DNA of 64,000 bases, taken from assembly GCF_036365525.1 (NCBI RefSeq), contig NC_090399.1, positions 66,706,862 through 66,770,861 of the forward strand. Direction: 5' to 3'. Below are positions 1 to 38,837 of this stretch, in pieces. The translations under genes and the position numbers were made by a program. This DNA is from Heterodontus francisci. Lineage: Eukaryota. Below the pieces are notes generated by a model. That model ran no database searches, was not told the DNA's origin, and saw only the letters and a list, made by a program, of their open reading frames with translations. How positions within the stretch are numbered: the stretch's first letter is position 1; each line of letters opens with the position of its first letter.

Positions 1-3000
1 CCTGTCTCTGTGTTTCAGTCTCTCACTCTGTCCAGAGCCCGAGTACTGGGAGAGACAGACACAGATACATGGAGCTGGGTGCAGGGTGGGGATTGTGTTG
101 GATTTATCTCTGTGTCTGGTTCAGTCTCTATTCTAACCCTGTCTCTGTGTTTCAGTCTCTCACTCTGTCCAGACCCCGAGTACTGGGAGAGACAGACACA
201 GATACACAAAGCTGGGTGCAGGGTGGGGATTGTGTTGGATTTATCTCTGTGTCTGGTTCAGTCTCTATTCTAACCCTGTCTCTGTGTTTCAGTCTCTCAC
301 TCTGTCCAGACCCCGAGTACTGGGAGAGACAGACACAGATACACAGAGCTGGGTGCAGGGTGGGGATTATGTTGGATTTATTTCTGTGTCTGGTTCAGTC
401 TCTATTCTAACCCTGTCTCTGTGTTTCAGTCTCTCACTGTGTCTAGACCCCGAGTACTGGGAGAGACAGACACAGATACACAGAGCTGGGTGCAGGGTGG
501 GGATTGTGTTGGATTTATCTCTGTGTCTGGTTCAGTCTCTATTCTCACCCTGTCTCTGTGTTTCAGTCTCTCACTCTGTCCAGAGCCCGAGTACTGGGAG
601 AGAGACACACAGATACACAGAGCTGAGTGCAGGGTGGGGATTGTGTTGCATTTATTTCTGTGTCTGGTTCAGTCTCTAATCTATTCCTGTCTCTGGGTTT
701 CAGTCTCTCACTGTGTCTAGACCCCGAGTACTGGGAGAGACAGACACAGATACACAGAGCTGGGTGCAGGGTGGGGATTGTGTTGCATTTATTTCTGTGT
801 CTGGTTCAGTCTCTATTCTAACCCTGTCTCTGTGTTTCAGACTCTCACTGTGTCCAGACACCGAGTACTGGGAGAGACAGACACAGATACACAGAGCTGG
901 GTGCGGGGTGGGGATTGTGTTGGGATTTATTTGAATGTCTGGTTCAGTCTCTATTCTAACCCTGTCTCTGTGTTTCAGTCTCTCACTCTGTCCAGAACCC
1001 GAGTTCTGGGAGAGACTGACACAGATACATGGAGGTGGGTGCAGGGTGGGGATTGTGTTGGGATTTATTTCTATGTCTGGTTCAGTCTCTATTCTAACCC
1101 TGTCTCTGTGTTTCAGTCTCTCACTGTGTCTAGACCCCGAGTACTGGGAGAGACAGACACAGATACACAGAGCTGGGTGCAGGGTGGGGATTGTGTTGCA
1201 TTTATTTCTGTGTCTGGTTCAGTCTCTATTCTAACCCTGTCTCTGTGTTTCAGTCTCTCACTGTGTCTAGACCCCGAGTACTGGGAGAGACAGACACAGA
1301 TACACAGAGCTGGGTGCAGGGTGAGGATTGTGTTGCATTTATTTCTGTGTCTGGTTCAGTCTCTATTCTAACCCTGTCTCTGTGTTTCAGTCTCTCACTG
1401 TGTCTCGACCCCGAGTACTGGGAGAGACAGACACAGATACACGGAGCGGGGTGCAGGGTGGTGATTGTGTTGGATTTATTTCTGTGTCTGTTTCAGTCTC
1501 TATTCTAACCCTGTCTCTGTGTTTCAGTCTCTCACTCTGTCCAGACCCCGAGTACTGGGAGAGACAGACACAGATACACAGAGCTGGGTGCAGAGTGGGG
1601 ATTGTGTTGGATTTATTTCTATGTCTGGTTCAGTCTCTATTCTCACCCTGTCTCTGTGTTTCAGTCTCTCACTCTGTCCAGAGCCCGAGTACTGGGAGAG
1701 ACAGACACAGATACACGGAGCTGGGTGCAGGGTGGGGATTGTGTTGCATTTATTTCTGTGTCTGGTTCAGTCTCTAATCTATTCCTGTCTCTGGGTTACA
1801 GTCTCTCACTCTGTCCAGACCCCGAGTACTGGGAGAGACAGACACAGATACACAGAGCTGGGTGCAGGGTGGGGATTGTGTTGGATTTATTTCTATGTCT
1901 GGTTCAGTCTCTATTCTAACCCTGTCTCTGTGTTTCAGTCTCTCACTGTGTCTAGACCCCGAGTACTGGGAGAGACAGACACAGATACACAGAGCTGGGT
2001 GCAGGGTGGGGATTGTGTTGGATTTATTTCTCTGTCTGTTTCAGTCTCTATTCTAACCCTGTCTCAGTGTTTCAGTCTCTCACTGTGTCTAGACCCCGAG
2101 TACTGGGAGAGACAGACACAGATACACAGAGCTGGGTGCAGGGTGGGGATTGTGTTGGATTTATTTCTCTGTCTGTTTCAGTCTCTATTCTAACCCTGTC
2201 TCTGTGTTTCATTCTCTCACTGTGTCTAGACCCCGAGTACTGGGAGAGACAGACACAGATACACAGAGCTGGGTGCAGGGTGGGGATTGTGTTGGATTTA
2301 TTTCTATGTCTGGTTCAGTCTCTATTCTAACCCTGTCTCTGTGTTTCAGTCTCTCACTGTGTCTAGACCCCGAGTACTGGGAGAGACAGACACTGATACA
2401 CAGAGCTGGGTGCAGGGTGGGGATTGTGTTGGATTTATTTCTATGTCTGGTTCAGTCTCTATTCTAACCCTGTCTCTGTGTTTCAGTCTCTCACTCTGTC
2501 CAGACCCCGAGTACTGGGAGAGACAGACACAGATACACAGAGCTGGGTGCAGAGTGGGGATTGTGTTGGATTTATTTCTATGTCTGGTTCAGTCTCTATT
2601 CTCACCCTGTCTCTGTGTTTCAGTCTCTCACTCTGTCCAGAGCCCGAGTACTGGGAGAGACAGACACAGATACATGGAGCTGGGTGCAGGGTGGGGATTG
2701 TGTTGGATTTATCTCTGTGTCTGGTTCAGTCTCTATTCTAACCCTGTCTCTGTGTTTCAGTCTCTCACTCTGTCCAGACCCCGAGTACTGGGAGAGACAG
2801 ACACAGATACACAGAGCTGGGTGCAGGGTGGGGATTGTGTTGGATTTATCTCTGTGTCTGGTTCAGTCTCTATTCTAACCCTGTCTCTGTGTTTCAGTCT
2901 CTCACTCTGTCCAGACCCCGAGTACTGGGAGAGACAGACACAGATACACAGAGCTGGGTGCAGGGTGGGGATTGTGTTGGATTTATTTCTGTGTCTGGTT

Positions 3001-6000
3001 CAGTCTCTATTCTAACCCTGTCTCTGTGTTTCAGTCTCTCACTGTGTCTAGACCCCGAGTACTGGGAGAGACAGACACAGATACACAGAGCTGGGTGCAG
3101 GGTGGGGATTGTGTTGGATTTATCTCTGTGTCTGGTTCAGTCTCTATTCTCACCCTGTCTCTGTGTTTCAGTCTCTCACTCTGTCCAGAGCCCGAGTACT
3201 GGGAGAGAGACACACAGATACACAGAGCTGAGTGCAGGGTGGGGATTGTGTTGCATTTATTTCTGTGTCTGGTTCAGTCTGTATTCTAACCCTGTCTCTG
3301 TGTTTCAGTCTCTCACTGTGTCCAGTCCCTGAGTACTGGGAGAGACAGACACTGATACACAGAGCTGGGTGCAGGGTGGGGATTGTGTTGTATTTATTTC
3401 TGTGTCTGGTTCAGTCTCTATTCTAACCCTGTCTCTGTGTTTCAGTCTCTCACTGTGTCTAGACCCCGAGTACTGGGAGAGACAGACACAGATACACAGA
3501 GCTGGGTGCAGGGTGGGGATTGTGTTGGATTTATTTCTATGTCTGGTTCAGTCTCTATTCTCACCCTGTCTCTGTGTTTCAGTCTCTCACTCTGTCCAGA
3601 GCCCGAGTACTGGGAGAGACAGACACAGATACACAGAGCTTTGTGCAGGGTGGGGATTGTGTTGGATTTATTTCTCTGTCTGGTTCAGTCTGTATTCTAA
3701 CCCTGTCTCTGTGTTTCAGTCTCTCACTGTGTCCAGACCCCGAGTACTGGGAGAGACAGACACTGATACACTGAGCTGGGTGCAGGGTGGGGATTGTGTT
3801 GGATTTATTTCTGTGTCTGGTTCAGTCTCTATTCTAACCCTGTCTCTGTGTTTCAGTCTCTCACTGTGTCCAGACCCCGAGTACTGGGAGAGACAGACAC
3901 AGATACACAGAGCTGGGTGCAGGGTGGGGATTCTGTTGGGATTTATTTGAATGTCTGGTTCAGTCTCTATTCTAACCCTGTCTCTGTGTTTCATTCTCTC
4001 ACTGTGTCTTGACCTCGAGTACTGGGAGAGACAGACACTGATACACAGAGCTGGGTGCAGGGTGGGGATTGTGTTGGATTTATTTCTATGCCTGGTTCAG
4101 TCTCTATTCTAACCCTGTCTCTGTGTTTCAGACTCTCACTGTGTCTAGACACCGAGTACTGGGAGAGACAGACACAGATACACAGAGCTGGGTGCAGGGT
4201 GGGGATTGTGTTGGGATTTATTTGAATGTCTGGTTCAGTCTCTATTCTAACCCTGTCTCTGTGTTTCAGTCTCTCACTGTGTCAAGACCCCGAGTACTGG
4301 GAGAGACAGACACAGATACACGGAGCTGGGTGCAGGGTGGGGATTCGGTTGGGATTTATTTGAATGTCTGGTTCAGTCTCTATTCTAACCCTGTCTCTGT
4401 GTTTCAGTCTCTCACTGTGTCTAGACCCCGAGTACTGGGAGAGACAGACACAGATACACAGAGCTGGGTGCAGGGTGGGGATTGTGTTGCATTTATTTCT
4501 GTGTCTGGTTCAGTCTCTATTCTAACCCTGTCTTTGTGTTTCAGTCTCTCACTGTGTCCAGACCCCGAGTACTGGGAGAGACAGACACAGATACCCAGAG
4601 CTGGGTGCAGGGTGGGGATTGTGTTGGATTTATTTCTCTGTCTGCCTCAGTCTCTATTGTAACCCTTTCTTTGTGTTTCAGTCTCTCACTGTGTCTAGAC
4701 CCCGAGTACTGGGAGAGACAGACACAGATACACAGAGCTGGGTGCAGGGTGGGGATTGTGTTGCATTTATTTCTGTGTCTGGTTCAGTCTCTAATCTATT
4801 CCTGTCTCTGGGTTTCAGTCTCTCACTGTGTCTAGACCCCGAGTACTGGGAGAGACAGACACAGATACACAGAGCTGGGTGCAGGGTGGGGATTGTGTTG
4901 CATTTATTTCTGTGTCTGGTTCAGTCTCTAATCTATTCCTGTCTCTGGGTTTCAGTCTCTCACTGTGTCTAGACCCCGAGTACTGGGAGAGACAGACACA
5001 GATACACAGAGCTGGGTGCAGGGTGGGGATTGTGTTGGGATTTATTTGAATGTCTGGTTCAGTCTCTATTCTAACCCTGTCTCTGTGTTTCAGTCTCTCA
5101 CTCTGTCCAGAACCCGAGTACTGGGAGAGACAGACACAGATACACGGAGCGGGGTGCAGGGTGGTGATTGTGTTGGATTTATTTCTGTGTCTGTTTCAGT
5201 CTCTATTCTAACCCTGTCTCTGTGTTTCAGTCTCTCACTCTGTCCAGACCCCGAGTACTGGGAGAGACAGACACAGATACACAGAGCAGGGTGCAGAGTG
5301 GGGATTGTGTTGGATTTATTTCTATGTCTGGTTCAGTCTCTATTCTCACCCTGTCTCTGTGTTTCAGTCTCTCACTCTGTCCAGAGCCCGAGTACTGGGA
5401 GAGACAGACACAGATACACGGAGCTGGGTGCAGGGTGGGGATTGTGTTGCATTTATTTCTGTGTCTGGTTCAGTCTCTAATCTATTCCTGTCTCTGGGTT
5501 TCAGTCTCTCACTCTGTCCAGAGCCCGAGTACTGGGAGAGACAGACACAGATACACAGAGCTGGGTGCAGGGTGGGGATTGTGTCGGATTTATTTCTGTG
5601 TCTGGTTCAGTCTCTATTCTAACCCTGTCTCTGTGTTTCAGTCTCTCACTCTGTCCAGACCCCGAGTACTGGGAGAGACAGACACAGATACACAGAGCTG
5701 GGTGCAGAGTGGGGATTGTGTTGGATTTATTTCTATGTCTGGTTCAGTCTCTATTCTCACCCTGTCTCTGTGTTTCAGTCTCTCACTCTGTCCAGAGCCC
5801 GAGTACTGGGAGAGACAGACACAGATACACGGAGCTGGGTGCAGGGTGGGGATTGTGTTGCATTTATTTCTGTGTCTGGTTCAGTCTCTAATCTATTCCT
5901 GTCTCTGGGTTTCAGTCTCTCACTCTGTCCAGAGCCCGAGTACTGAGAGAGACAGACACAGATACACAGAGCTGGGTGCAGGGTGGGGATTGTGTTGGAT

Positions 6001-9000
6001 TTATTTCTCTGTCTGGTTCAGTCTCTATTCTAACCCTGTCTCTGTGTTTCACTCTCTCACTGTGTCCAGACCCCGAGTACTGGGAGAGACAGACACTGAT
6101 ACACAGAGCTGGGTGCAGGGTGGGGATTGTGTTGGATTTATTTCTATGTCTGGTTCAGTCTCTATTCTCACCCTGTCTCTGTGTTTCAGTCTCTCAATCT
6201 GTCCAGACCCCGAGTACTGGGAGAGACAGACACAGATACACAGAGCTGGGTGCAGGGTGGGGATTGTGTTGGATTTATTTCTGTGTCTGGTTCAGTCTCT
6301 ATTCTAACCCTGTCTCTGTGTTTCACTCTCTCACTGTGTCCAGACCCCGAGTACTGGGAGAGACAGACACAGATACACAGAGCTGGGTGCAGGGTGGGGA
6401 TTGTGTTTGATTTATTTCTCTGTCTGGTTCAGTCTGTATTCTAACCCTGTCTCTGTGTTTCAGTCTCTCACTCTGACCAGAGCCCGAGTATTGGGAGAGA
6501 CAGACACAGATACACAGAGCTGGGTGCAGGGTGGGGATTGTGTTGGATTTATTTCTGTGTCTGGTTCAGTCTCTATTCTAACCCTGTCTCTGTGTTTCAG
6601 TCTCTCACTCTGTCCAGACCCCGAGTACTGGGAGAGACAGACACAGATACACAAAGCTGGGTGCAGGGTGGGGATTGTGTTGGATTTATCTCTGTGTCTG
6701 GTTCAGTCTCTATTCTAACCCTGTCTCTGTGTTTCAGTCTCTCACTCTGTCCAGACCCCGAGTACTGGGAGAGACAGACACAGATACACAGAGCTGAGTG
6801 CAGGGTGGGGATTGTGTTGGATTTATTTCTGTGTCTGGTTCAGTCTCTATTCTAACCCTGTCTCTGTGTTTCAGTCTCTCACTGTGTCTAGACCCCGAGT
6901 ACTGGGAGAGACAGACACAGATACACAGAGCTGGGTGCAGGGTGGGGAATTTGTTGGATTTATCTCTGTGTCTGGTTCAGTCTCTATTCTCACCCTGTCT
7001 CTGTGTTTCAGTCTCTCACTCTGTCCAGAGCCCGAGTACTGGGAGAGAGACACACAGATACACAGAGCTGAGTGCAGGGTGGGGATTGTGTTGCATTTAT
7101 TTCTGTGTCTGGTTCAGTCTGTATTCTAACCCTGTCTCTGTGTTTCAGTCTCTCACTGTGTCCAGTCCCTGAGTACTGGGAGAGACAGACACAGATACAC
7201 AGAGCTGGGTGCAGGGTGGGGATTGTGTTGTATTTATTTCTATGTGTGGTTCAGTCTGTATTCTAACCCTGTCTCTGTGTTTCAGTCTCTCACTGTGTCT
7301 AGACCCCGAGTACTGGGAGAGACAGACACAGATACACAGAGCTGGGTGCAGGGTGGGGATTGTGTTGGATTTATTTCTATGTCTGGTTCAGTCTCTATTC
7401 TAACCCTGTCTCTGTGTTTCACTCTCTCACTGTGTCCAGACCCCGAGTACTGGGAGAGACAGACACAGATACACAGAGCTGGGTGCAGGGTGGGGATTGT
7501 GTTGGATTTATTTCTATGTCTGGTTCAGTCTCTATTCTCACCCTGTCTCTGTGTTTCAGTCTCTCACTCTGTCCAGAGCCCGAGTACTGGGAGAGACAGA
7601 CACTGATACACAGAGCTTTGTGCAGGGTGGGGATTGTGTTGGATTTATTTCTCTGTCTGGTTCAGTCTGTATTCTAACCCTGTCTCTGTGTTTCAGTCTC
7701 TCACTGTGTCTAGACCCCGAGTACTGGGAGAGACAGACACTGATACACAGAGCTGGGTGCAGGGTGGGGATTGTGTTGGATTTATTTCTGTGTCTGGTTC
7801 AGTCTCTATTCTAACCCTGTCTCTGTGTTTCAGTCTCTCACTGTGTCCAGACCCCGAGTACTGGGAGAGACAGACACAGATACACAGAGCTGGGTGCAGG
7901 GTGGGGATTGTGTTGGGATTTATTTGAATGTCTGGTTCAGTCTCTATTCTAACCCTGTCTCTGTGTTTCATTCTCTCACTGTGTCTTGACCCCGAGTACT
8001 GGGAGAGACAGACACTGATACACAGAGCTGGGTGCAGGGTGGGGATTGTGTTGGATTTATTTCTATGCCTGGTTCAGTCTCTATTCTAACCCTGTCTCTG
8101 TGTTTCAGACTCTCACTGTGCCTAGACACCGAGTACTGGGAGAGACAGACACACATACACAGAGCTGGGTGCAGGGTGGGGATTGTGTTGGGATTTATTT
8201 GAATGTCTGGTTCAGTCTCTATTCTAACCCTGTCTCTGTGTTTCAGTCTCTCACTGTGTCAAGACCCCGAGTACTGGGAGAGACAGACACAGATACACGG
8301 AGCTGGGTGCAGGGTGGGGATTCGGTTGGGATTTATTTGAATGTCTGGTTCAGTCTCTATTCTAACCCTGTCTCTGTGTTTCAGTCTCTCACTGTGTCTA
8401 GACCCCGAGTACTGGGAGAGACAGACACAGATACACAGAGCTGGGTGCAGGGTGCAGATTGTGTTGGATTTATTTCTATGTCTGGTTCAGTCTCTATTCT
8501 GACCCTGTCTCTGTGTTTCATTCTCTCACTGTGTCCAGACCCCGAGTACTGGGAGAGACAGACACAGATACACAGAGCTGGGTGCAGGGTGGGGATTGTG
8601 TTGGATTTATTTCTATGTCTGGTTCAGTCTCTATTCTAACCCTGTCTCTGTGTTTCAGTCTCTCACTGTGTCTAGACCCCGAGTACTGGGAGGGACAGAC
8701 ACAGATACACAGAGCTGGGTGCAGGGTGGGGATTGTGTTGGATTTATTTCTATGTCTGGTTCAGTCTCTATTCTAACCCTGTCTCTGTGTTTCAGTCTCT
8801 CACTGTGTCTGGACCCCGAATACTGGGAGAGACAGACACAGATACACAGAGCTGGGTGCAGGGTGGGGATTGTGTTGGATTTATTTCTATGTCTGGTTCA
8901 GTCTCTATTCTAACCCTGTCTCTGTGTTTCAGTCTCTCACTGTGTCTAGACCCCGAGTACTGGGAGAGACAGACACAGATACACAGAGCTGGGTGCAGGG

Positions 9001-12000
9001 TGGGGATTGTGTTGGATTTATTTCTATGTCTGGTTCAGTCTCTATTCTAACCCTGTCTCTGTGTTTCAGTCTCTCACTGTGTCTAGACCCCGAGTACTGG
9101 GAGAGACAGACACTGATACACAGAGCTGGGTGCAGGGTGGGGATTGTGTTGGATTTATTTCTGTGTCTGGTTCAGTCTCTATTCTAACCCTGTCTCTGTG
9201 TTTCAGTCTCTCACTGTGTATGGACCCCGAGTACTGGGAGAGACAGACACAGATACACAGAGCTGGGTGCAGGGTGGGGATTGTGTTGGATTTATTTCTG
9301 TGTCTGGTTCTGTCTCTATTCTAACCCTGTCTCTGTGTTTCAGTCTCTCACTGTGTCTAGACCCCGAGTACTGGGAGAGACAGACACAGATACACAGAGC
9401 TGGGTGCAGGGTGGGGATTCGGTTGGGATTTATTTGAATGTCTGGTTCAGTCTGTATTCTAACCCTGTCTCTGTGTTTCAGTCTCTCACTCTGTCCAGAC
9501 CCCGAGTACTGGGAGAGACAGACACAGATACACAGAGCTGGGTGCAGGGTGGGGATTGTGTTGGGATTTATTTGAATGTCTGGTTCAGTCTCTATTCTAA
9601 CCCTGTCTCTGTGTTTCAGTCTCTCACTGTGTCTAGACCCCGAGTACTGGGAGAGACAGACACAGATACACAGAGCTGGGTGCAGGGTGGGGATTGTGTT
9701 GGATTTATTTCTATGCCTGGTTCAGTCTCTATTCTAACCCTGTCTCTGTGTTTCAGACTCTCACTGTGTCAAGACCCCGAGTACTGGGAGAGACAGACAC
9801 AGATACACAGAGCTGGGTGCAGGGTGGGGATTCGGTTGGGATTTATTTGAATGTCTGGTTCAGTCTCTATTCTAACCCTGTCTCTGTGTTTCAGTCTCTC
9901 ACTGTGTCCAGACCCCGAGTACTGGGAGAGACAGACACAGATACACAGAGCTGGGTGCAGGGTGGGGATTGTGTTGGATTTATTTCTATGTCTGGTTCAG
10001 TCTCTATTCTAACCCTGTCTCTGTGTTTCAGTCTCTCACTGTGTCTAGACCCCGAGTACTGGGAGAGACAGACACAGATACACAGAGCTGGGTGCAGGGT
10101 GGGGATTGTGTTGGATTTATTTCTATGTCTGGTTCAGTCTCTATTCTAACCCTGTCTCTGTGTTTCAGTCTCTCACTCTGTCCAGACCCCGAGTACTGGG
10201 AGAGACAGACACTGATACACAGAGCTGGGTGCAGGGTGGGGATTGTGTTGGATTTATTTCTGTGTCTGGTTCAGTCTCTATTCTAACCCTGTCTCTGTGT
10301 TTCAGTCTCTCACTGTGTCTAGACCCCGAGTACTGGGAGAGACAGACACTGATACACAGAGCTGGGTGCAGGGTGGGGATTGTGTTGGATTTATTTCTGT
10401 GTCTGGTTCAGTCTCTATTCTAACCCTGTCTCTGTGTTTCAGTCTCTCACTGTGTATGGACCCCGAGTACTGGGAGAGACAGACACAGATACACAGAGCT
10501 GGGTGCAGGGTGGGGATTGTGTTGGATTTATTTCTGTGTCTGGTTCTGTCTCTATTCTAACCCTGTCTCTGTGTTTCAGTCTCTCACTGTGTCTAGACCC
10601 CGAGTACTGGGAGAGACAGACACAGATACACAGAGCTGGGTGCAGGGTGGGGATTCGGTTGGGATTTATTTGAATGTCTGTTTCAGTCTGTATTCTAACC
10701 CTGTCTCTGTGTTTCAGTCTCTCACTCTGTCCAGACCCCGAGTACTGGGAGAGACAGACACAGATACACAGAGCTGGGTGCAGGGTGGGGATTGTGTTGG
10801 GATTTATTTGAATGTCTGGTTCAGTCTCTATTCTAACCCTGTCTCTGTGTTTCAGTCTCTCACTGTGTCTAGACCCCGAGTACTGGGAGAGACAGACACA
10901 GATACACAGAGCTGGGTGCAGGGTGGGGATTGTGTTGGATTTATTTCTATGCCTGGTTCAGTCTCTATTCAAACCCTGTCTCTGTGTTTCAGACTCTCAC
11001 TGTGTCAAGACCCCGAGTACTGGGAGAGACAGACACAGATACACAGAGCTGGGTGCAGGGTGGGGATTCGGTTGGGATTTATTTGAATGTCTGGTTCAGT
11101 CTCTATTCTACCCCTGTCTCTGTGTTTCAGACTCTCACTGTGCCTAGACACCGAGTACTGGGAGAGACAGACACTGATACACAGAGCTGGGTGCAGGGTG
11201 GGGATTGTGTTGGATTTATTTCTATGTCTGGTTCAGTCTCTATTCTAACCCTGTCTCTGTGTTTCAGTCTCTCACTCTGTCCAGACCCCGAGTACTGGGA
11301 GAGACAGACACAGATACACAGAGCTGGGTGCAGGGTGGGGATTGTGTTGGATTTATTTCTATGTCTGGTTCAGTCTCTATTCTAACCCTGTCTCTGTGTT
11401 TCAGTCTCTCGCTCTGTCCAGACCCCGAGTACTGGGAGAGACAGACACTGATACACAGAGCTGGGTGCAGGGTGGGGATTGTGTTGGATTTATTTCTGTG
11501 TCTGGTTCAGTCTCTATTCTAACCCTGTCTCTGTGTTTCAGTCTCTCACTGTGTCTAGACCCCGAGTACTGGGAGAGACAGACACTGATACACAGAGCTG
11601 GGTGCAGGGTGGGGATTGTGTTGGATTTATTTCTGTGTCTGGTTCAGTCTCTATTCTAACCCTGTCTCTGTGTTTCAGTCTCTCACTGTGTCTAGACCCC
11701 GAGTACTGGGAGAGACAGACACAGATACACAGAGCTGGGTGCAGGGTGGGGATTGTGTTGGGATTTATTTGAATGTCTGGTTCAGTCTCTATTCTAACCC
11801 TGTCTCTGTGTTTCATTCTCTCACTGTGTCTAGACCCCGAGTACTGGGAGAGACAGACACAGATACACGGAGCTGGGTGCAGGGTGGGGATTGTGTTGGA
11901 TTTATTTCTATGTCTGGTTCAGTCTCTATTCTAACCCTGTCTCTGTGTTTCATTCTCTCACTGTGTCTAGACCCCGAGTACTGGGAGAGACAGACACAGA

Positions 12001-14558
12001 TACACAGAGCTGGGTGCAGGGTGGGGATTCGGTTGGGATTTATTTGAATGTCTGGTTCAGTCTCTATTCTAACCCTGTCTCTGTGTTTCAGTCTCTCACT
12101 GTGTCTAGACCCCGAGTACTGGGAGAGACAGACACAGATACACAGAGCTGGGTGCAGGGTGGGGATTGTGTTGGATTTATTTCTATGTCTGGTTCAGTCT
12201 CTATTCTAACCCTGTCTCTGTGTTTCAGTCTCTCACTGTGTCTAGACACCGAGTACTGGGAGAGACAGACACTGATACACAGAGCTGGGTGCAGGGTGGG
12301 GATTGTGTTGGATTTATTTCTATGTCTGGTTCAGTCTCTATTCTAACCCTGTCTCTGTGTTTCAGTCTCTCACTGTGTCTAGACCCCGAGTACTGGGAGA
12401 GACAGACACTGATACACAGAGCTGGGTGCAGGGTGGGGATTGTGTTGGATTTATTTCTATGTCTGGTTCATTCTCTATTCTAACCCTGTCTCTGTGTTTC
12501 AGTCTCTCACTCTGTCCAGACCCCGAGTACTGGGAGAGACAGACACAGATACACAGAGCTGGGTGCAGGGTGGGGATTGTGTTGGATTTATTTCTATGTC
12601 TGGTTCAGTCTCTATTCTAACCCTGTCTCTGTGTTTCAGTCTCTCACTCTGTCCAGACCCCGAGTACTGGGAGAGACAGACACTGATACACAGAGCTGGG
12701 TGCAGGGTGGGGATTGTGTTGGATTTATTTCTGTGTCTGGTTCAGTCTCTATTCTAACCCTGTCTCTGTGTTTCAGTCTCTCACTGTGTCTAGACCCCGA
12801 GTACTGGGAGAGACAGACACTGATACACAGAGCTGGGTGCAGGGTGGGGATTGTGTTGGATTTATTTCTGTGTCTGGTTCAGTCTCTATTCTAACCCTGT
12901 CTCTGTGTTTCAGTCTCTCACTGTGTCTAGACCCCGAGTACTGGGAGAGACAGACACAGATACACAGAGCTGGGTGCAGGGTGGGGATTGTGTTGGGATT
13001 TATTTGAATGTCTGGTTCAGTCTCTATTCTAACCCTGTCTCTGTGTTTCATTCTCTCACTGTGTCTAGACCCCGAGTACTGGGAGAGACAGACACAGATA
13101 CACGGAGCTGGGTGCAGGGTGGGGATTGTGTTGGATTTATTTCTATGTCTGGTTCAGTCTCGATTCTAACCCTGTCTCTGTGTTTCATTCTCTCACTGTG
13201 TCTAGACCCCGAGTACTGGGAGAGACAGACACAGATACACAGAGCTGGGTGCAGGGTGGGGATTGTGTTGGGATTTATTTGAATGTCTGGTTCAGTCTCT
13301 ATTCTTACCCTGTCTCTGTGTTTCATTCTCTCACTGTGTCCAGACCCCGAGTACTGGGAGAGACAGACACAGATACACAGAGCTGGGTGCAGGGTGGGGA
13401 TTGTGTTGGATTTATTTCTGTGTCTGGTTCAGTCTCTATTCTAACCCTGTCTCTGTGTTTCAGTCTCTCACTGTGTCTAGACCCCGAGTACTGGGAGTGA
13501 CAGACACTGATACACAGAGCTGGGTGCAGGGTGGGGATTGTGTTGGATTTATTTCTGTGTCTGTTTCAGTCTGTATTCTAACCCTGTCTCTGTGTTTCAG
13601 TCTCTCACTGTGTTTAGACCCCGAGTACTGGGAGAGACAGACACAGATACACAGAGCTGAGTGAAGGGTGGGGATTGTGTTGGATTTATTTCTGTGTCTG
13701 GTTCAGTCTCTATTCTAACCCTGTCTCTGTGTTTCAGTCTCTCACTGTGTCTAGACCCCGAGTACTGGGAGAGACAGACACAGATACACAGAGCTGGGTG
13801 CAGGGTGGGGATTGTGTTGGGATTTATTTCTGTGTCTGGTTCAGTCTCTATTCTCACCCTGTCTCTGTGTTTCACTCTCTCACTGTGTCTTGACCCCGAG
13901 TACTGGGAGAGACAGACACAGATACACAGAGCTGGGTGCAGGGTGGGGATTGTGTTGGATTTATTTCTATGTCTGGTTCAGTCTCTATTCTAACCCTGTC
14001 TCTGTGTTTCAGTCTCTCACTGTGTCTAGACCCCGAGTACTGGGAGAGACAGACACTGATACACAGAGCTGGGTGCAGGGTGGGGATTGTGTTGGATTTA
14101 TTTCTGTGTCTGGTTCAGTCTCTATTCTAACCCTGTCTCTGTGTTTCAGTCTGTCACTGTGTCTAGACCCCGAGTACTGGGAGAGACAGACACTGATACA
14201 CAGAGCTGGGTGCAGGGTGGGGATTGTGTTGGATTTATTTCTATGTCTGGTTCAGTCTCTATTCTAACCCTGTCTCTGTGTTTCAGTCTCTCACTGTGTC
14301 CAGACCCCGAGTACTGGGAGAGACACACAGATACACAGAGCTGGGTGCAGGGTGGGGATTGTGTTGGATTTATTTCTGTGTCTGGTTCAGTCTCTATTCT
14401 AACCCTGTCTCTGTGTTTCAGTCTCTCACTGTGTCTAGACCCCGAGTACTGGGAGAGACAGACACTGATACACAGAGCTGGGTGCAGGGTGGGGATTGTG
14501 TTGGATTTATTTCTAAGTCTGGTTCAGTCTCTATTCTAACCCTGTCTCTGTGTTTCAG
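1..14558 (+). repeat. 137-bp tandem satellite (about 106 copies in the window, continuing past the left edge), filling the intron upstream of the alpha1 exon
   Basis: Unit: ctaaccctgtctctgtgtttcagtctctcact(c/g)tgtc(c/t)agaccccgagtactgggagagacagacacagatacacagagctgggtgcagggtggggattgtgttggatttatttct(g/a)tgtctggttcagtctctatt. ORF starts recur every 137 nt (e.g. 8459, 8596, 8733, 8870). There are 138-bp and 135-bp indel variants. Confidence 0.98.
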
Positions 14559-14819
14559 ACTCTCACTCTCTGCGGTATTTTCACACCTCAACGACCCCGA
14601 TTCCCGGTCTCCCGGAGTTTGTGACTGTTGGTTATGTGGATGAGCTACAGATTGATCACTATGACAGTGATCTGAAGAAGGCTGTCCCTCGGCAGAGCTG
14701 GATGGCGGAGAGTCAGGGCCTTGATTACTGGGAGGAGGAGACACAGAAACGCTGGTTTTGGGAGGAGGACGGGAAGGTCAATATTCGTAACGTCATGAAG
14801 CAGAGCAACCAGTCTACCG
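14559..14819 (+). CDS. UAA: MHC class I heavy chain, alpha1-domain exon (phase 1-1, 261 nt): (D)SHSLRYFHTSTTPIPGLPEFVTVGYVDELQIDHYDSDLKKAVPRQSWMAESQGLDYWEEETQKRWFWEEDGKVNIRNVMKQSNQST
   Basis: Acceptor ctaaccctgtctctgtgtttcag|AC at 14558/14559 and donor G|GTGAGT at 14819/14820. Class I alpha1 motifs SHSLRYF, PEFV.VGYVD, YDSD, PRQ.W and YWE, plus the N86 sequon NQS. The UAA assignment rests on remembered similarity to nurse shark Gici-UAA, not on a search. Confidence 0.96.
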
Positions 14820-14968
14820 GTGAGTGTCTCTCAGTATACCCGGGATCAGATCTGGGAATGGGGGGGGTGCGGTGTGGATGGGGATCGGGAATCAGATCTG
14901 GGAATGGGGGATGTGGATGGGGATTGAATGATCCAGTGATCTGGGATGTGAAACTCTCTCATTAACAG
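14820..14968 (+). other. Short GT-AG intron (149 bp) between the alpha1 and alpha2 exons
   Basis: Begins GTGAGT and ends ttaacAG. Splicing joins the two exons in frame (ST-G-IHT). Confidence 0.95.
14842..14925 (+). repeat. Two-copy imperfect direct repeat (~40-45 bp) in the short intron
   Basis: gggatcagatctgggaatggggg...tgtggatggggatc is followed by gggaatcagatctgggaatgggggatgtggatggggatt. Confidence 0.8.
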
Positions 14969-15241
14969 GGATACACACCTGGCAGATGATGTGCGGCTGT
15001 GAACTGCGGGATGACGGCAGCACCGAGGGGTTTACCCAGTTTGGCTGGGACGGGAAAGACCTGATCAGCTTCGACAAGGAGAATATGGTGTGGGTGACCC
15101 CGGTCAGCTGGGGAGAGATCACCAAGAACAAGTGGGATCAGAACAAGGCCAGGAACCAGTATTGGAAGGGTTACCTGGAGGGAATCTGCATAGAGTGGCT
15201 GAAGAATTACCTGAAGCTGGGAGAAAAAGAACTGAGACCCG
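14969..15241 (+). CDS. UAA: MHC class I alpha2-domain exon (phase 1-1, 273 nt): (G)IHTWQMMCGCELRDDGSTEGFTQFGWDGKDLISFDKENMVWVTPVSWGEITKNKWDQNKARNQYWKGYLEGICIEWLKNYLKLGEKELRP
   Basis: Acceptor ctctctcattaacag|GG at 14968/14969 and donor G|GTGAGT at 15241/15242. Conserved disulfide Cys pair (GC..; ICIEW) and motifs HT.Q, DG.D, TK.KW, YLEG.C.EWL..Y. In frame with the alpha1 exon. Confidence 0.97.
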
Positions 15242-15319
15242 GTGAGTGAGAGTGAGGAGAATGAGTGAGGATGAGTGAATGAGGGAAGGGACAGTGACTG
15301 AGGAGGAGACAGTGGAGGT

Positions 15320-18300
15320 GAGTGAGGGGGAACTGAAAGAGAGGGAACGAGTGAGGGGGGATCTGAGAGCGAGAGAATGAGTGGGGAAGGAACAGAGAGC
15401 AAGCGAAGGAGTGAGGGGGGACCTGAGAGTGAGTAAACGAGTGAGGGAGGAACTGACAGCGAGTGAATAAGCGAGGAGGAACTGAGAGCGAGGGAGTGAG
15501 TGAGGGGGGAACCTGAGAGCGAGGGAACAAGATAGGGAGGAACTGAGAGTGAGTGAACAAGTGAGGGGGGAACTGAGTGTGAGTGAACAAGTGAGGGAGG
15601 AACTGAGAGCGAGTAACCAAGTAAGGAGGAACTGAGAGCGAGTGAACGAGTGAGGGGGGAACTGAGAGTGAGGGAACGAGTGAGGGAGGAACTGACAGCG
15701 AGTGAACAAGTGAGGAGGAACTGAGAGCGAGTGAACGAGTGAGGGGGGAACTGACAGTGAGGGAACGAGTGAGGGAGGAACTGACAGCGAGTGAACAAGT
15801 GAGGAGGAACTGAGAGCGAGGGAGTGAGTGAGGGAGGAACTGAGAGTGAGTGAACGAGTGAGGGAGGAACTGAGAGCGAGTGAACAAGTGAGGGAGAAAC
15901 TGAGAGTGAGTGAACAAGTGAGGGAGGAACTCAGAGCGAGTGAACAAGTAAGGAGGAACTGAGAGCGAGGGAGTGAGTGAGGGGGGACCTGAGAGCGAGG
16001 GAACAAGTGAGGAGGAACTGAGAGTGAGTGAACAAGTGAGGGAGGAACTGAGAGCGAGTGAACAAGTAAGGAGGAACTGAGATCGAGTGAACGAGTAAGG
16101 GAGGAACTGAGCGCGAGGGAGTGAGTGAGGGGGGACCTGAGAGCGAGGGAACAAGTGAGGAGGAACTGAGAGTGAGTGAACGAGTGAGGGAGGAACTGAG
16201 AGCGAGTGAACGAGTGAGGGAGGAACTGAGGGCGAGGGAACAAGTGAGGAGGAACTGAGAGTGAGTGAACGAGTGAGGGAGGAACTGACAGCGAGTGAAC
16301 AAGTGAGGAGGATCAGAGAGCGAGTGAACGAGTGAACGAGTGAGGGGGGACCTAAGAGTGAGGGAGGAACTGAGAGTGAGTGAACAAGTGAGGGGGACCT
16401 GAGAGCGAGGGAACAAGTGAGGAGGAACTGAAAGCGAGGGAACGAGTGAGGGAGGAACTGAGAGCGAGTGAACCAGTGAGGAGGAACTGAGAGTGAGTGA
16501 ACGAGTGAGGGAGGAACTGAGAGCGAGTGAACAAGTGAGGAGGAACTGAGAGTGAGTGAACGAGTGAGGGAGGAACTGAGAGCGAGTGAACGAGTGAGGG
16601 GGGAACTGAGAGTGAGGGAACGAGTGAGGGCGGAACTGAGAGCGAGTGATCGAGTGAGGGGGGAACTGAGTGAGGGAACGAGTGAGGGAGGAACTGAGAG
16701 CGATTGAACGAGTGTGGGGGGAACTGAGAGTGAGTGAACGAGTGAGGGGGGGCACTGAGAGTGAGGGAACGAGTGATGAAGGAACTGAGAGCGAGTGAAC
16801 GTGTGAGGGGGGAACTGAGAGTGAGTGAACGAGTGAGGGGGGAACTGAGAGTGAGGGAACGTGTGAGGGAGGAACTGAGAGCGAGTGAACGAGTGAGGGG
16901 GGAACTGAGAGTGAGAGAATGAGGAAGGGGGAACTGAGAGTGAGGGATCAAGTGAGGGGGGAACTGAGAGTCAGGGAACGAGTGAGGGAGGAACTGAGAG
17001 CATGTGAAGGGGGGAACTGAGAGTGAGTGAACGAGTGAGGGGGGAACTGAGAGTGAGGGAACGAGTGAGGGAGGAACTGAGAGCGAGTGAACGAGTGTGG
17101 GGGGAACTGAGAGCGAGGGAACGAGTGTGGGGGGAACTGAGAGCGAGTGAACGAGTGAGGGAGGAACTGAGAGCGAGTGAACGAGTGAGGGGGGAACTGA
17201 GAGTGAGGGAACGAGTGAGGGAGGAACTGAGAGCGAGTGAACGAGTGAGGGGGGAACTGAGTGAGGCAACGAGTGAGGGAGGAACTGAAAGCGAGTGACC
17301 GAGTGTGGGGGGCACTGAGAGTGAGGGAATGAGTGAGGGAGGAACTGAGAGTGAGCGAACGAGTGAGGGGAAAACTGAGAGTGAGTGAACGAGTGAGGGG
17401 GGAACTGAGAGTGAGCGAACGAGGAAGGGGAGAACTGAGAGTGAGGGAACGAGTGAGGGGGGAACTGAGAGTGAGTAAACGAGTGAGGGGGGAACTGAGA
17501 GTAAGTAAATGAGTGAGGGGGAAATGAGAGTGGGAGAACGAGTGAGGGGGGAACTGAGAGCAAGTGAGGTGGGAACTGAGAGTGAGTGAACGAGTGAGGG
17601 AGGAATTGAGTGAGAGCGAATGGTTGAGGGAGGAACTGAGAGAGAGCGAACGAGTGAGGGGGGGAACTGAGAGTGAGGGAACGAGTGAGGGAGGAACTGA
17701 GAGCAAGTGAACGAGCGAGGGGGGAACTGAGAGTGAGGGAACAAGTGAGGGGGGAACTGGGAGTGCGTGAACGAGTGAGGGGGGAACTGGGAGTGAGTGA
17801 ACGAGTGAGGGGGGAACTGAGAGTGAGTGAACGAGTGAGGGGGGAACTGAGAGAAAGGGAATGAGTGAGGGAGGAATTGAGAGTGAGTGAACGAGTGAGG
17901 GGGGAACTGAGAGTGAGTGAACGAGTGAGGGGGGAACTGAGAGTGAGTGAACAAGTGAGGGGGGAACTGAGAGCGATTGAACGAGTGAGGGGGGAACTGA
18001 GAGTGCGCGAAAGAGTGAGGGGGGAACTGAGAGTGAGCGAACGAGTGAAGGTGGAACTGAGAGTGAGTGAACCAGTGAGGGGGGAACTGAGAGTGATTGA
18101 CGAGTGAGGGGGGAACTGAGAGAGAGGGAACGAGTGAGGGGGGAACTGAGAGCGAGTGAACGAGTGAGGGGGGAACTGAGAGCGAGGGAGTGAGTGAGGG
18201 AGGAACTGAGAGTGAGTGAACGAGTGAGGGAGGAACTGAGAGCGAGTGAACAAGTGAGGGAGAAACTGAGAGTGAGTGAACAAGTGAGGGAGGAACTCAG

Positions 18301-36300: not shown

Positions 36301-38465
36301 GAACGAGTGAGGGGGGAATTGATAGAGAGGCAACGAATGAGAAGGGAACTGAGAGCAAGGGAGCGAGTGAGGGGGGAACTGAGAGCGAGGGTACGAGTGA
36401 GGGGGGAACTGAGAGCGAGGGAACGAGTGAGGGCGGAGCTGAGAGTGAACGAATGAGAGGGGGGGGACTGAGAGTGAGCGAATCAGTGAGGGTGAAACTG
36501 AGAGCGAGGGAACGAGTGAGGAGGGAACTCAGAGTGAGGGAACGAGTGAGGGGGAACTGAGAGTGAGCAAGTGACTGAGGGGGGAACTGAGAGTGAGCGA
36601 GTGAGTAAGGGGGGAACTGAGAGTGAGCGAACGAGTGAGGGGGGAACTGAGAGCGAGGGTACGAGTGAGGGGGGAACTGAGAGCGAGGGTACGAGTGAGA
36701 GCGGAGCTGAGAGTGAGCGAACGAGTGAGGGGGGAACTGAGAGTGAGCGAACCAGCGAGGGTGAAACTGAGAGCGAGGGATCGAGTGAGGAGGGAACTCA
36801 GAGTGAGGGAACGAGTGAGGGGGGAACTGAGAGCGAGGGAACGAGTGTAGGCGGAACTGAGAGTGAGTGAACGAGTGAGGGGGGAACTGAGAGCGAGTGA
36901 CGGGGGAACTGAGAGCGAGGGAACGAGTGTAGGCGGAACTGAGAGTGAGTGAACGAGTGAGGGGGGAACTGAGAGAGACTGAGTGAGGGGGAACTGAGAG
37001 TGTGCGAGTGAGTGAGGGGGGAACTGAGAGTGAGCGAGTGAGTGATGGGGGAACTGAGATTGAGCGAGTGGAGGGGGAACTGAGAGTGAGCGATTGGAGG
37101 GGGAACTGATTGAGCGAGTGAGGGGGGAACTGAGAGCGGGCGAACGAGTGAGGGAGGAACTGAGAGCGAGAGAACGATTGAGGGGGGAACTGAGAGTGAG
37201 TGAACGAGTGACGGGGGAACTGAGAGCGAGCGAACGAGTGTGGGGGGAACTGACAGCGAGCGAATGAGTGAGGGGGCAACTGAGAGTGAGCGAATTACTG
37301 AGGGGGGAATTGAGAGAGAAGGAACGAGTGAGGGGGGAATTGAGAGAGAGGGAACGAGTGAGAGGGGGAACTGAGAGCGAGGAAGCGAGTGAGAGGGGAA
37401 CTGAGAGTGAGCGAATTACTGAGGGGGGAATTGAGAGAGAAGGAACGAGTGTGGGGGGAATTGAGAGAGAGGGAACGAGTGAGAGGGGGAACTGAGAGCG
37501 AGGGAGCGAGTGAGAGGGGAACTGAGAGTGAGCGAATTACTGAGGGGGGAATTGAGAGAGAAGGAACGAGTGAGGGGGGGAACTGAGAGCGAGGGAGCGA
37601 GTGAGAGGGGAACTGAGAGTGAGCGAATTACTGAGGGGGGAATTGAGAGAGAAGGAACGAGTGAGGGGGGGAACTGAGAGCGAGGGAGCGAGTGAGAGGG
37701 GAAATGAGAGTGAGCGAATTACTGAGGGGGGAATTGAGAGAGAGGGAACGAGTGAGAGGGGAACTGAGAGCGAGGGAGAGAGTGAGAGGGGAACTGAGAG
37801 CGAGGGAACGAGTGAGGGGGGAACTGAGAGAGAGGGAATGAGTGAGGGGGGAACTGAGAGAGAGGGAACGAATGAGGGGGTTACTGAGAGAGAGGGAACG
37901 AGTGAGGGGGGAGCTGAGAGCGAGTAAACGAGTGAGGGGGGAACTGAGAGAGAGGGAATGAGTGAGGGGGGAACTGAGAGAGAGGGAACGAATGAGGGGG
38001 GTACTGAGAGCGAGTAAATGAGTGAGGGGGAACTGAGAGAGAGGGAATGAGTGAGGGGGGAACTGAGAGAGAGGGAACGAATGAGGGGGTTACTGAGAGA
38101 GAGGGAACGAATGAGGGGGGAACTGAGAGCGAGTGAGGGGGGAACTAAGAGCGAGAGAACGAGTGAGAGGGGAACTGAGAGCGAGTGAACCAGTGAGGGG
38201 GGAACTGAGAGAGAGGGAACGAATGAGGGGGGTACTGAGAGCAAGACAACGAGTGAGGGGGAACTGAGAGACAGTGAACGAGTGAGGGGGGAAATGAGAG
38301 TGAGCGAGTGGAGGGGTAACTGAGAGTGAGCGAGTGGAGGGGGCACTGAGTGAGCGAGTGAGTGAGGTGGGAACTGAGAGTGAGTGAGTGAGGGGGGAAC
38401 TGGAGAGTGAGCGAGTGGAGGGGGAACTGAGAGTGAGCGAGTGAGTGATTGAGGGGGGTAACTGA
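15320..38465 (+). repeat. Purine-rich ~30-bp minisatellite (consensus GAACTGAGAGTGAGTGAACGAGTGAGGGGG, roughly 800 units) filling the 23,313-bp alpha2-alpha3 intron (15242-38554)
   Basis: 30-nt periodicity is visible as vertically aligned columns (e.g. 17761-18000, 26401-27340). There are 24-28-bp deletion variants, and the array degenerates at both ends. Boundaries are approximate. Confidence 0.97.
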
Positions 38466-38530
38466 GGCGGGCGGGTGAGGGGAGTGGGATGGACCGAGAG
38501 AGGGCGAGTCTGTTTCTCTGGATTACTGGA

Positions 38531-38554
38531 CTAACTCCTCTCTCTCTGTCTCAG
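38531..38554 (+). promoter_or_regulatory. 3' splice site of the alpha3 exon (branch point, polypyrimidine tract, CAG)
   Basis: CTAACtcctctctctctgtctCAG lies in the short unique stretch that ends the purine-rich array. Confidence 0.9.
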
Positions 38555-38818: not shown

Positions 38819-38837
38819 GTAAGTCTTTCTCCCACAG

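What the first reader, a model, noticed from the sequence alone, without database searches (positions are those of the whole stretch)
1..14558. The 137-bp unit contains a degenerate copy of the alpha1-helix coding segment (PEYWERQTQIHR-[G]-WVQGG)
Seen: unit gagtactgggagagacagacacaga matches exon 14723-14747 gattactgggaggaggagacacaga at 20/25 nt. One frame reads DPEYWERQTQIHR and, after a 1-nt shift, WVQGG. This is collinear with the exon's GLDYWEEETQKRWFWEEDG. Established: (G)PEYW(D/E)R.TQ is the canonical class I alpha1 motif around Y59, leading into the polymorphic peptide/TCR-contacting helix. The repeat is closer to that canonical motif than this gene's own exon (LDYWEEE). Inference: the unit came from an ancestral allele or paralogous alpha1 exon by an internal deletion joining the exon start (tctcactct) to the Y59 region, and was then amplified over 100-fold.
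Basis: partly seen in the sequence, partly recalled or inferred. Interest (0 to 1): 0.8.

Follow-up and report, generated by a model that had tools for sequence, protein, structure and literature searches.

The report
Exon-border satellite in shark MHC gene
A 137-base repeat copied at least 106 times in the first intron of a horn-shark MHC class I gene contains a decayed scrap of the gene's peptide-binding (alpha1 helix) exon. This makes the satellite a relic of a duplicated intron/exon border that keeps an older, more typical version of the helix than the gene itself.

Summary

**The array and the gene**
- Window 1-14558 holds 106 full 137-bp units, on average 97% identical to their consensus. 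The array ends exactly at the acceptor of the alpha1 exon.
- All three exons in the window match the NCBI horn-shark (Heterodontus francisci) class I protein P0174 at 100%.

**Anatomy of the unit**
- nt 1-10/12 repeat the exon start.
- nt 12-72 are collinear with exon 14712-14773: 41 of 62 nt identical, with one 1-nt gap (0 of 2000 shuffles reach this score).
- nt 73-137 are the intron's 3' end, carrying CTAAC, a pyrimidine tract and CAG.

**Match to the protein family**
- Translated with one -1 frameshift, the unit reads PEYWERQTQIHR/WVQGG.
- The four Triakis scyllium class I alleles that score best match 13 of 18 residues, or 14 if the broken codon is read as Gly. Horn-shark paralogue P0171 matches 13.
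- The gene's own exon matches only 7.
- Family-wide score is 71, against 35±4 (maximum 55) for shuffled units.

**What is inferred, not shown**
- The 142-nt internal deletion.
- Whether the donor was the lineage's own ancestral exon or a paralogue.

**Context**
- The scan already noted the same unit at other class I genes of this genome (s1-873570, s1-874233).
- No function was shown. The copies are too uniform to serve as a gene-conversion library.

The parts
1..14558 (+). 137-bp tandem array: 106 full units plus an 18-nt partial unit at the window start. It fills the 3' part of intron 1 of the class I gene and runs off the window start.
   Evidence: TRF. BLAST of the consensus gives 106 full units averaging 97% identity. 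Pairwise unit identity is about 95%, with no clear higher-order period.
2213..2349 (+). One of four units identical to the consensus (the others start at 8933, 10032 and 12092).
   Evidence: Exact match. Its frames read LSLCLDPEYWERQTQIHRAGCRVG and ...SWVQGGDC.
14422..14433 (+). Copy of the exon start in the last unit (unit nt 1-10/12, TCTCTCACT...).
   Evidence: The real exon reads ACTCTCACTCT. 34 of 106 units carry C at nt 10, extending the match to CTCTCACTCT. Array periodicity continues to 14567.
14433..14493 (+). Alpha1-helix-like segment in the last unit (unit nt 12-72), corresponding to codons about 52-71 around Y59, with one 1-nt deletion.
   Evidence: Collinear DNA alignment to 14712-14773 is 41 of 62 identical, reached by 0 of 2000 shuffles. 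Protein-level scores are 69-71 against a null of 35±4.
14494..14558 (+). Intron-derived part of the last unit (unit nt 73-137): CTAAC branch-point-like motif at 14536-14540, pyrimidine tract, and CAG acceptor at 14556-14558.
   Evidence: No similarity to exon 2, intron 2 or exon 3. Its last 23 nt resemble the 3' end of intron 3 (8 of 1000 shuffles). In this last unit it serves as the real acceptor.
14559..14819 (+). Alpha1 exon (exon 2) of the class I gene. Codons run 14561-14818, phase 1.
   Evidence: Pfam MHC_I 4.6e-19. 100% identical to P0174 residues 18-103. D17 = G|AC fits the junction at 14559. A perfect contig in a run guessed to be RNA covers 14593-14818 and joins 14819 to 14969.
14712..14773 (+). 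Exon segment homologous to the unit (SQGLDYWEEETQKRWFWEEDG).
14820..14968 (+). Intron 2 (149 nt, GT..AG).
   Evidence: Joint seen in contig record 14 of run X5.
14969..15241 (+). Alpha2 exon (exon 3).
   Evidence: Pfam MHC_I 9.5e-24. 100% identical to P0174 residues 105-194.
15242..38554 (+). Intron 3, almost entirely a 30/60-bp GAGTGA-rich satellite that starts at the donor.
   Evidence: TRF and sequence.
38555..38818 (+). Alpha3 exon (exon 4, C1-set Ig domain).
   Evidence: Pfam C1-set 8.8e-14. 100% identical to P0174 residues 196-282.
38819..64000 (+). Intron 4. A 47-bp satellite begins 18 nt after the donor and runs off the window end.
   Evidence: TRF reports 38837-64000, 521 copies. Sequence.

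Best explanation
The 137-bp unit is a non-coding relic of a tandem duplication that spanned the intron-1/exon-2 border of a class I gene. That gene's alpha1 helix resembled those of the Triakis alleles and horn-shark P0171 (UAA-like).

Each unit consists of:
- about 65 nt of the intron's 3' end (branch-point-like CTAAC, pyrimidine tract, CAG);
- the first 10-12 nt of the alpha1 exon;
- about 61 nt from codons ~52-71, the Y59 region that opens the alpha1 helix.

The roughly 142 nt between the exon start and codon 52 are missing, and one base is lost in the helix part. The unit was then multiplied to more than 100 copies, and the copies were kept alike by unequal exchange or slippage (concerted evolution).

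Shown: the tandem structure, the exon-start copy in register with the array, the collinear DNA and protein similarity, and the fact that the fragment is nearer to typical shark class I helices than to this gene's present exon.

Inferred:
- a single internal deletion;
- an array that arose in the common ancestor of the neighbouring class I paralogues, after which P0174's own helix diverged (LDYWEEETQKRWFWEEDG);
- no coding role for the fragment today. A leader spliced to a decoy acceptor meets a stop after 5 codons in 42 of the 91 decoys and within 190 codons in 46 more. Three frames stayed open over the 200 codons read.
For: - Array and consensus.
- The array ends at the acceptor, and periodicity runs 9 nt into the exon.
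- The C10 variant in 34 units extends the exon-start match.
- DNA similarity to the own exon: score 29 against 17±2.4 (2 of 2000; 5 of 3000 local shuffles) and collinear 41 of 62 with 0 of 2000. The repeat finder D3 found the same match independently.
- Protein level: maximum 71 against a null of 35-36±3-4, 0 of 500 in two nulls. The profile hit lies at positions 53-65, reached by 0 of 3000 shuffles.
- Best partners are the four top Triakis scyllium alleles (14 of 18), horn-shark P0171 (13 of 18), Carcharodon P0265 (13) and nurse-shark UAA 6LUP (12). The own exon scores 7 of 18.
- The pattern [ED]YWE[RQ]QTQI..GW.Q.G occurs in only 5 of 283 alpha1 domains, all Triakis alleles or P0171.
- The exon-like and intron-like halves of the unit diverge equally (2.8% and 3.4%), so the coding-like part is under no extra constraint.
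- The gene is annotated and spliced normally.
- Unit contigs with 3-4 differences occur in runs of two other species labels.
- The scan noted the same unit at other class I genes of this chromosome (not checked here). Both points fit an old, shared origin.
Against: - No paralogue or orthologue DNA could be read, so the donor lineage rests on 18-21 translated residues and one assumed frameshift.
- Pfam itself gives no hit for the unit's translation, because the fragment is too short.
- Without the frameshift, an in-frame path to the 'ILRSSEH' lineage (P0009, P0226) scores about as well (71 and 63). The assignment to the UAA-like lineage is therefore not exclusive.
- The length arithmetic 65+215-142-1=137 follows from the alignment and is not independent evidence for a single deletion.
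- A neutral fragment that still keeps 13-14 of 18 residues implies either a fairly recent origin or a very slow rate. That was not resolved.
Confidence: 0.8

Rival explanations
1. The exon scrap was imported from a paralogous class I gene (P0171-like, highly expressed) by non-allelic recombination or gene conversion. It was not inherited from this gene lineage's own ancestral exon. The amplification followed, or the whole array was transferred.
For: The unit is much nearer to P0171 (13 of 18) than to the adjacent exon (7 of 18). P0171 and P0174 are on the same 74-Mb record and are 94% identical in alpha3 but only 63% in alpha1, which suggests exchange or mosaic evolution among the paralogues.
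Against: The unit shares R62 and R67 with Triakis and not with P0171, and shares GG with P0171 and not with Triakis. That fits an ancestral state better than a recent copy of P0171. The intron-side and exon-start parts of the unit are continuous with this gene's own acceptor. The same array is reported at several paralogues, which is explained more simply by inheritance through gene duplication.
Confidence: 0.15
2. Chance resemblance. The AG/AC-rich low-complexity stretch of the unit only happens to look like the purine-rich Y59 region.
For: The matching stretch is purine-rich on both sides. Pfam finds nothing in the translation. The strict-scoring DNA match to the own exon is only 29 nt long, with p about 0.001-0.002.
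Against: Shuffles that keep the local composition (only nt 17-82 permuted) never reach the observed protein score (0 of 500, max 55 against 71) or the profile score (0 of 3000). The hit lies at the correct profile position, is collinear with the exon-start copy, and sits in an array that demonstrably begins inside this very exon.
Confidence: 0.02
3. The array is a working part of the gene. It could be a bank of pseudo-exon donors for gene conversion into the polymorphic alpha1 helix, as with chicken pseudo-V genes. It could also be a set of decoy or recursive splice sites that tunes expression.
For: 91 units keep a TTTCAG acceptor with the exon-start context, and a CTAAC motif lies upstream. 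The fragment covers the polymorphic helix. A run guessed to be RNA holds the unit at low depth.
Against: The copies are nearly uniform. Only four sites in the coding-like part vary in 5 or more units, and none is patterned like allelic variation. The adjacent exon differs from the unit at 21 of 62 aligned positions (20 mismatches and one gap), so there is no sign of conversion. The unit has no strong donor site (read directly from the sequence). Divergence is the same in the exon-like and intron-like halves. Normal splicing is seen.
Confidence: 0.03

Closest known systems
Classical shark MHC class I (UAA-type): Triakis scyllium class I alleles (AAB97336-AAB97353), nurse-shark UAA*01 (PDB 6LUP), horn-shark P0171
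   Same: Residues 54-71 of their alpha1 domain (PDYWERQTQIARGWEQTG and similar) match the unit's translation at 12-14 of 18. The match is collinear and lies at the expected distance from the exon start.
   Different: The unit holds only about 21 codons plus 3-4 codons of the exon start. It carries a frameshift, lies in an intron and is not an open exon. It is a relic, not a member gene.
Satellite-filled giant introns (Drosophila kl-3 and kl-5, PMC6508621)
   Same: Expressed genes whose introns consist largely of tandem satellite arrays. Here introns 1, 3 and 4 are at least 14.5 kb, 23 kb and at least 25 kb of satellite.
   Different: In this gene the intron-1 satellite is derived from the gene's own exon/intron border and abuts the splice site. 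The size is tens of kb, not megabases. No special expression programme was shown.
Satellites born from unique genic sequence (CapA satellite of Platyrrhini, derived from an intron; bioRxiv 10.1101/213868)
   Same: The origin of a tandem family can be traced to a single-copy genic progenitor.
   Different: The progenitor here includes coding sequence and a functional acceptor. As far as seen, the array stays at its birthplace in class I genes.
Pseudogene donor arrays for gene conversion (chicken Ig pseudo-V; from general knowledge)
   Same: Multiple truncated copies of a variable-region coding segment lie upstream of the functional exon.
   Different: The copies are about 95% alike and show no diversity patterned on alleles. 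No conversion tract is seen in the adjacent exon.
Earlier scan finding s1-873570 (14 copies of the same 137-base unit at another horn-shark class I gene)
   Same: Same unit length, same position at the alpha1 acceptor and same reading as an exon-border relic.
   Different: That array has 14 copies and this one at least 106. Its claims were not re-tested here.

Membership tests
Sequence derived from an MHC class I alpha1 exon | Nucleotide similarity to an alpha1 exon above the composition-matched chance level | tested here: met
   Score 29 against 17±2.4 (2 of 2000; 5 of 3000 local shuffles). Collinear 41 of 62, reached by 0 of 2000. Independent hit D3.
Sequence derived from an MHC class I alpha1 exon | The translation matches the family at the homologous position | tested here: met
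   Frameshift-aware maximum 71 against a null of 35±4 (0 of 500 in each of two nulls). The own-built profile hits positions 53-65 at 10.1 bits (0 of 3000).
Sequence derived from an MHC class I alpha1 exon | Recognised by the curated Pfam model MHC_I (PF00129) | tested here: not met
   No family at E up to 10 for the 38- and 45-residue translations. A fragment of 13-18 residues is below what the 179-position model can detect.
Sequence derived from an MHC class I alpha1 exon | Physical continuity with a real alpha1 exon (the exon start is present in the unit, in register) | tested here: met
   Periodicity extends to 14567, 9 nt into the exon. 34 units match CTCTCACTCT.
Satellite / large minisatellite (tandem repeat array) | Head-to-tail copies of constant period, many copies, high homogeneity | tested here: met
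   106 units of 135-138 nt, 97% identical to the consensus, at least 14.5 kb.
UAA-type (classical) shark class I as donor lineage | Lineage-specific helix pattern EYWE[RQ]QTQI..GW.Q.G | tested here: inconclusive
   The pattern is found in only 5 of 283 domains, all Triakis alleles or P0171, and in the unit only after one assumed frameshift. An in-frame path to the P0009/P0226 lineage scores similarly. The DNA of these exons was not available.
Gene-conversion donor array (pseudo-V type) | Copies diversified at the positions that vary in the functional exon | tested here: not met
   Only nt 19, 45, 53 and 60 vary in 5 or more units in the coding-like part. The exon-like and intron-like halves diverge equally.
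Gene-conversion donor array (pseudo-V type) | Tracts identical to donor copies in functional alleles | not testable with these tools
   This needs allele DNA from many individuals. The adjacent exon is only 66% identical to the unit.
Transposable-element or RNA-gene-derived repeat | Match to a known RNA family (for example a tRNA-derived SINE) | tested here: not met
   Rfam hits are all far below their gathering scores, the best being 27 bits against 80.

The most novel reading that the evidence does not exclude
The same exon-border satellite sits in front of the alpha1 exon of several linked class I paralogues, and other satellites follow the alpha2 and alpha3 exons. These long shared arrays could act as homology tracts for unequal exchange, moving the alpha1/alpha2 (peptide-binding) exon pair between loci. 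That would explain why horn-shark paralogues are 91-95% alike in alpha3 but only 38-63% alike in alpha1. On this reading the unit's scrap is a dated fossil of the ancestral helix.
Probability: 0.08. Interest if true: 0.8.

Novelty: new variant of a known kind. Interest (0 to 1): 0.45.

Why it matters
The origin of a satellite can rarely be traced. Here the progenitor is identifiable to the codon: the intron/exon border of an MHC class I peptide-binding exon.

- The array preserves an older, more typical state of the alpha1 helix next to a gene whose own helix has diverged strongly. This gives a built-in outgroup for dating paralogue divergence in a shark MHC.
- It places about 90 near-perfect copies of the real acceptor upstream of it. 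That makes a natural test case for how the spliceosome picks the right site across a repeat-filled intron.
- It warns annotators that alpha1-like hits in shark MHC introns can be satellite relics rather than pseudogenes.

Tried and rejected
1. The word-based protein search with the 86-residue alpha1 exon gave nothing because of its length limits. It was replaced by the exhaustive HMMER search.
No nucleotide comparison with other class I exons and no tree of exon DNA could therefore be made.
3. Pfam on the unit's translation gave no hit.
4. Similarity of the unit to intron 2 on the + strand was not significant (258 of 2000). The 27-nt inverted repeat between the unit and the start of intron 2 was also not significant (105 of 1000).
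5. The unit's nt 73-137 showed nothing against the rest of exon 2, intron 2 or exon 3.
6. The extra base in the 138-nt units does not restore the reading frame. It lies in the intron-like part.
7. No clear higher-order repeat was found. Lag-9 identity is only marginally raised.
8. Rfam gave only sub-threshold chance matches.
9. A metagenome scan for a 25-mer of the unit gave 0 matches.
10. Four literature searches found no description of this array or of exon-border satellites in shark MHC. A fifth search tried to confirm the UAA naming of the Triakis alleles and found no relevant paper.
Full-length database proteins (P0005, P0174) were used where length mattered.


Full report
**What is in the window**

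Positions 1-14558 are a head-to-tail array with a 137-bp period. TRF reports 106.2 copies at 95% matches. BLAST of the consensus finds 106 full units, on average 97.0% identical to it. The array runs off the window start.

The last unit ends at ...GTGTTTCAG (14558) and is followed directly by a class I alpha1 exon. The exon translations hit Pfam MHC_I (alpha1 4.6e-19, alpha2 9.5e-24) and C1-set (8.8e-14). All three exons are 100% identical to P0174, an NCBI protein named 'class I histocompatibility antigen, F10 alpha chain-like [Heterodontus francisci]'. The genome is therefore horn shark.

Residue D17 of P0174 is the split codon G|AC, so the annotated model uses the acceptor at 14558|14559.

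Exon bounds read from the sequence and from the contig joint:
- exon 2: 14559-14819
- intron 2: 14820-14968
- exon 3: 14969-15241
- exon 4: 38555-38818

A run of the same species label, guessed to be RNA, holds a contig identical to 14593-14818 and joined across intron 2 (GT..AG). The gene is therefore most likely expressed and correctly spliced.

**Check of the observation**

A consensus unit (for example 2213-2349) reads LSLCLDPEYWERQTQIHRAGCRVG in one frame and ...SWVQGGDC in the neighbouring frame.

**Is the match more than chance?**

At DNA level, unit against own exon:
- Smith-Waterman score 29 against 17.1±2.4 for dinucleotide shuffles (2 of 2000).
- 5 of 3000 shuffles reach it when only the purine-rich segment is shuffled.
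- With +1/-1 scoring the match becomes a collinear alignment of unit nt 12-72 with exon 14712-14773. The score is 18 against 8.8±1.6 (0 of 2000).
- That alignment has 41 of 62 identical columns and one 1-nt gap, placed where the reading frame has to shift.
- The repeat finder independently groups exon 14712-14734 with the unit copies (D3).

At protein level, I aligned 167 class I alpha1 domains to the unit with a frameshift-tolerant dynamic programme (BLOSUM62, frameshift penalty -8). The domains came from the exhaustive HMMER search.
- Best score 71.
- The maximum over all domains is 35.4±3.9 (max 47) for whole-unit shuffles and 36.2±3.3 (max 55) for shuffles confined to nt 17-82. Neither null reaches 71 in 500 trials.
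- The reverse complement scores 32 and the reversed sequence 37.

A profile HMM built from 282 alpha1 domains, excluding the window's own, hits the real unit at profile positions 53-65. That is the homologous place. It scores 10.1 bits, never reached in 3000 shuffles of either kind. The resemblance is real.

**Anatomy of the unit**

- nt 1-10/12 repeat the exon start. TCTCTCACT compares with the exon's ACTCTCACT. 34 of 106 units have C at nt 10, extending the match to CTCTCACTCT. The array's periodicity runs 9 nt into the exon.
- nt 12-72 correspond to codons about 52-71.
- nt 73-137 match nothing in exon 2, intron 2 or exon 3. They carry CTAAC, a pyrimidine tract and CAG. Their last 23 nt resemble the 3' end of intron 3 (8 of 1000 shuffles), which marks them as an ordinary branch-point/acceptor module.

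Relative to the exon, about 142 nt (the equivalent of 14570-14711) are absent. That gives 65 + 215 - 142 - 1 = 137. This sum follows from the alignment and is not independent proof of a single deletion.

**Which helix does the scrap resemble?**

Read with the one-base loss, the unit gives PEYWERQTQIHR(G)WVQGG. Over residues 54-71:

| Sequence | Matches of 18 |
|---|---|
| Four best-scoring Triakis scyllium class I alleles (PDYWERQTQIARGWEQTG or ...ILRGWEQTG) | 14 |
| Horn-shark P0171 (PDYWEQQTQIALGWEQGG) | 13 |
| Carcharodon P0265 | 13 |
| Nurse-shark UAA, PDB 6LUP chain | 12 |
| The gene's own exon (LDYWEEETQKRWFWEEDG) | 7 |

The own exon falls in the lower half of the 165 domains of equal length. 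The pattern [ED]YWE[RQ]QTQI..GW.Q.G occurs in only 5 of 283 domains, all Triakis alleles or P0171.

P0171 is probably the highly expressed paralogue. In the run guessed to be RNA, a contig at depth about 5800 runs on beyond the window's sequence with letters that translate to P0171's ...MMPRQRWMAE. The contig of this gene has depth 121.

The assignment to the UAA-like lineage is likely but not exclusive. An in-frame path to the 'ILRSSEH' lineage (Chiloscyllium P0009 at 71, horn-shark P0226 at 63) scores similarly, because most of the score comes from PEYWE.QTQI.

**Origin**

The simplest history is as follows.
1. A tandem duplication spanned the last ~65 nt of intron 1 through about codon 71 of an alpha1 exon with a UAA-like helix.
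2. The interior was lost.
3. The unit was amplified by unequal exchange.

The unit shares R62 and R67 with Triakis but GG70-71 with P0171. That pattern suits an ancestral state better than a recent copy of P0171. Contigs of 167 nt (137+30, a closed k=31 cycle) carry the unit with 3-4 differences in runs of two other coded species labels. Earlier notes of this scan report the same 137-base unit at a class I gene 358 kb upstream (14 copies, s1-873570) and a satellite of at least 17 kb at another alpha1 acceptor 246 kb downstream (s1-874233). I did not check these notes.

Together this favours an array older than the paralogue duplications, followed by divergence of P0174's own helix. Import from a paralogue remains possible (about 0.15).

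**Function**

Nothing indicates a coding or donor role.
- The exon-like and intron-like halves diverge equally from the consensus (2.8% and 3.4%).
- Only four coding-like sites vary in 5 or more units.
- The adjacent exon is 66% identical to the unit, so no conversion tract is visible.
- 91 units keep TTTCAG followed by the exon-start context. A leader spliced to one of them in the real phase would meet a stop after 5 codons in 42 cases and within 190 codons in 46 more. Three frames stayed open over the 200 codons read.

Whether these decoys are ever used could not be tested.

**Limits**

No DNA of paralogues or orthologues could be compared, and no nucleotide tree could be built.
- Pfam does not see the fragment.
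- Rfam gives only sub-threshold matches.
- A metagenome scan for the unit found nothing.
- Four literature searches found no prior description. The nearest published analogues are satellite-filled giant introns in Drosophila (PMC6508621) and a primate satellite traced to an intron (bioRxiv 10.1101/213868).
- Naming the Triakis alleles as the classical UAA locus rests on my own knowledge of the 1997 description, not on a tool result. A search to confirm it found no relevant paper. 6LUP as nurse-shark UAA*01 is stated in PMC8236899.

**Verdict**

This is a new variant of a known kind: a satellite traceable to a genic progenitor, here an exon/intron border of an MHC class I gene. The scan had already met it at a paralogue. 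Interest is moderate.

Noticed in passing
window 15242-38554 and 38819-64000: Introns 3 and 4 are also almost pure satellites that abut splice sites. A 30/60-bp GAGTGA-rich array starts at the exon-3 donor G|GTGAGTGAG. A 47-bp array starts 18 nt after the exon-4 donor and runs off the window. The whole 64-kb window is about 800 nt of exon plus three satellites.
   Followed up: partly
proteins P0171, P0174, P0175, P0206 (horn shark): These linked paralogues are 91-95% identical in alpha3 and 82-84% in alpha2 where measured. In alpha1 they are only 38-63% identical. This is exon-wise mosaic divergence in the class I cluster.
   Followed up: partly
window 14559-14819: The gene's own alpha1 helix is unusually acidic and Trp-rich (DYWEEETQKRWFWEEDG). 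Where Triakis has T-R before the NQS motif, this gene has K-Q. Y7, Y59 and the alpha2 T/K/W/Y/Y set look conserved by eye. Classical or non-classical status was not assessed.
   Followed up: no
window 1-14558: 91 decoy acceptors (TTTCAG plus exon-start context) precede the real one. In the leader's phase, 42 give a stop after 5 codons (SHCV*). Units with C at nt 15 read on for 13-190 codons across units.
   Followed up: partly
window 13982-14148 and 14392-14558: Unit contigs of 167 nt occur at low depth in runs guessed to be RNA, for the source species and for a second species label. They also occur in a DNA run of a third label. The choice between pre-mRNA, DNA carry-over and real transcripts was not resolved.
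   Followed up: no
window units starting at 8247, 9344/9482, 10580/10718 and 11954: 138-nt unit variants carry an extra G in GTTGGGATTT and GAA in place of CTA at nt 93-95. They recur about every 9 units, hinting at a weak higher-order repeat. Lag-9 identity is only marginally raised.
   Followed up: partly
window 14842-14915 (intron 2): A 28-nt direct repeat (GGGATCAGATCTGGGAATGGGG...) spaced 46 nt apart inside the short intron 2.
   Followed up: no
run X7 (second species label), laid on window 14529-14748: A 292-nt contig begins exactly 30 nt before the exon and continues through the exon with 19 differences. This would be expected if that species' homologue is also preceded by the repeat, with the k=31 unitig breaking at the repeat edge.
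   Followed up: no
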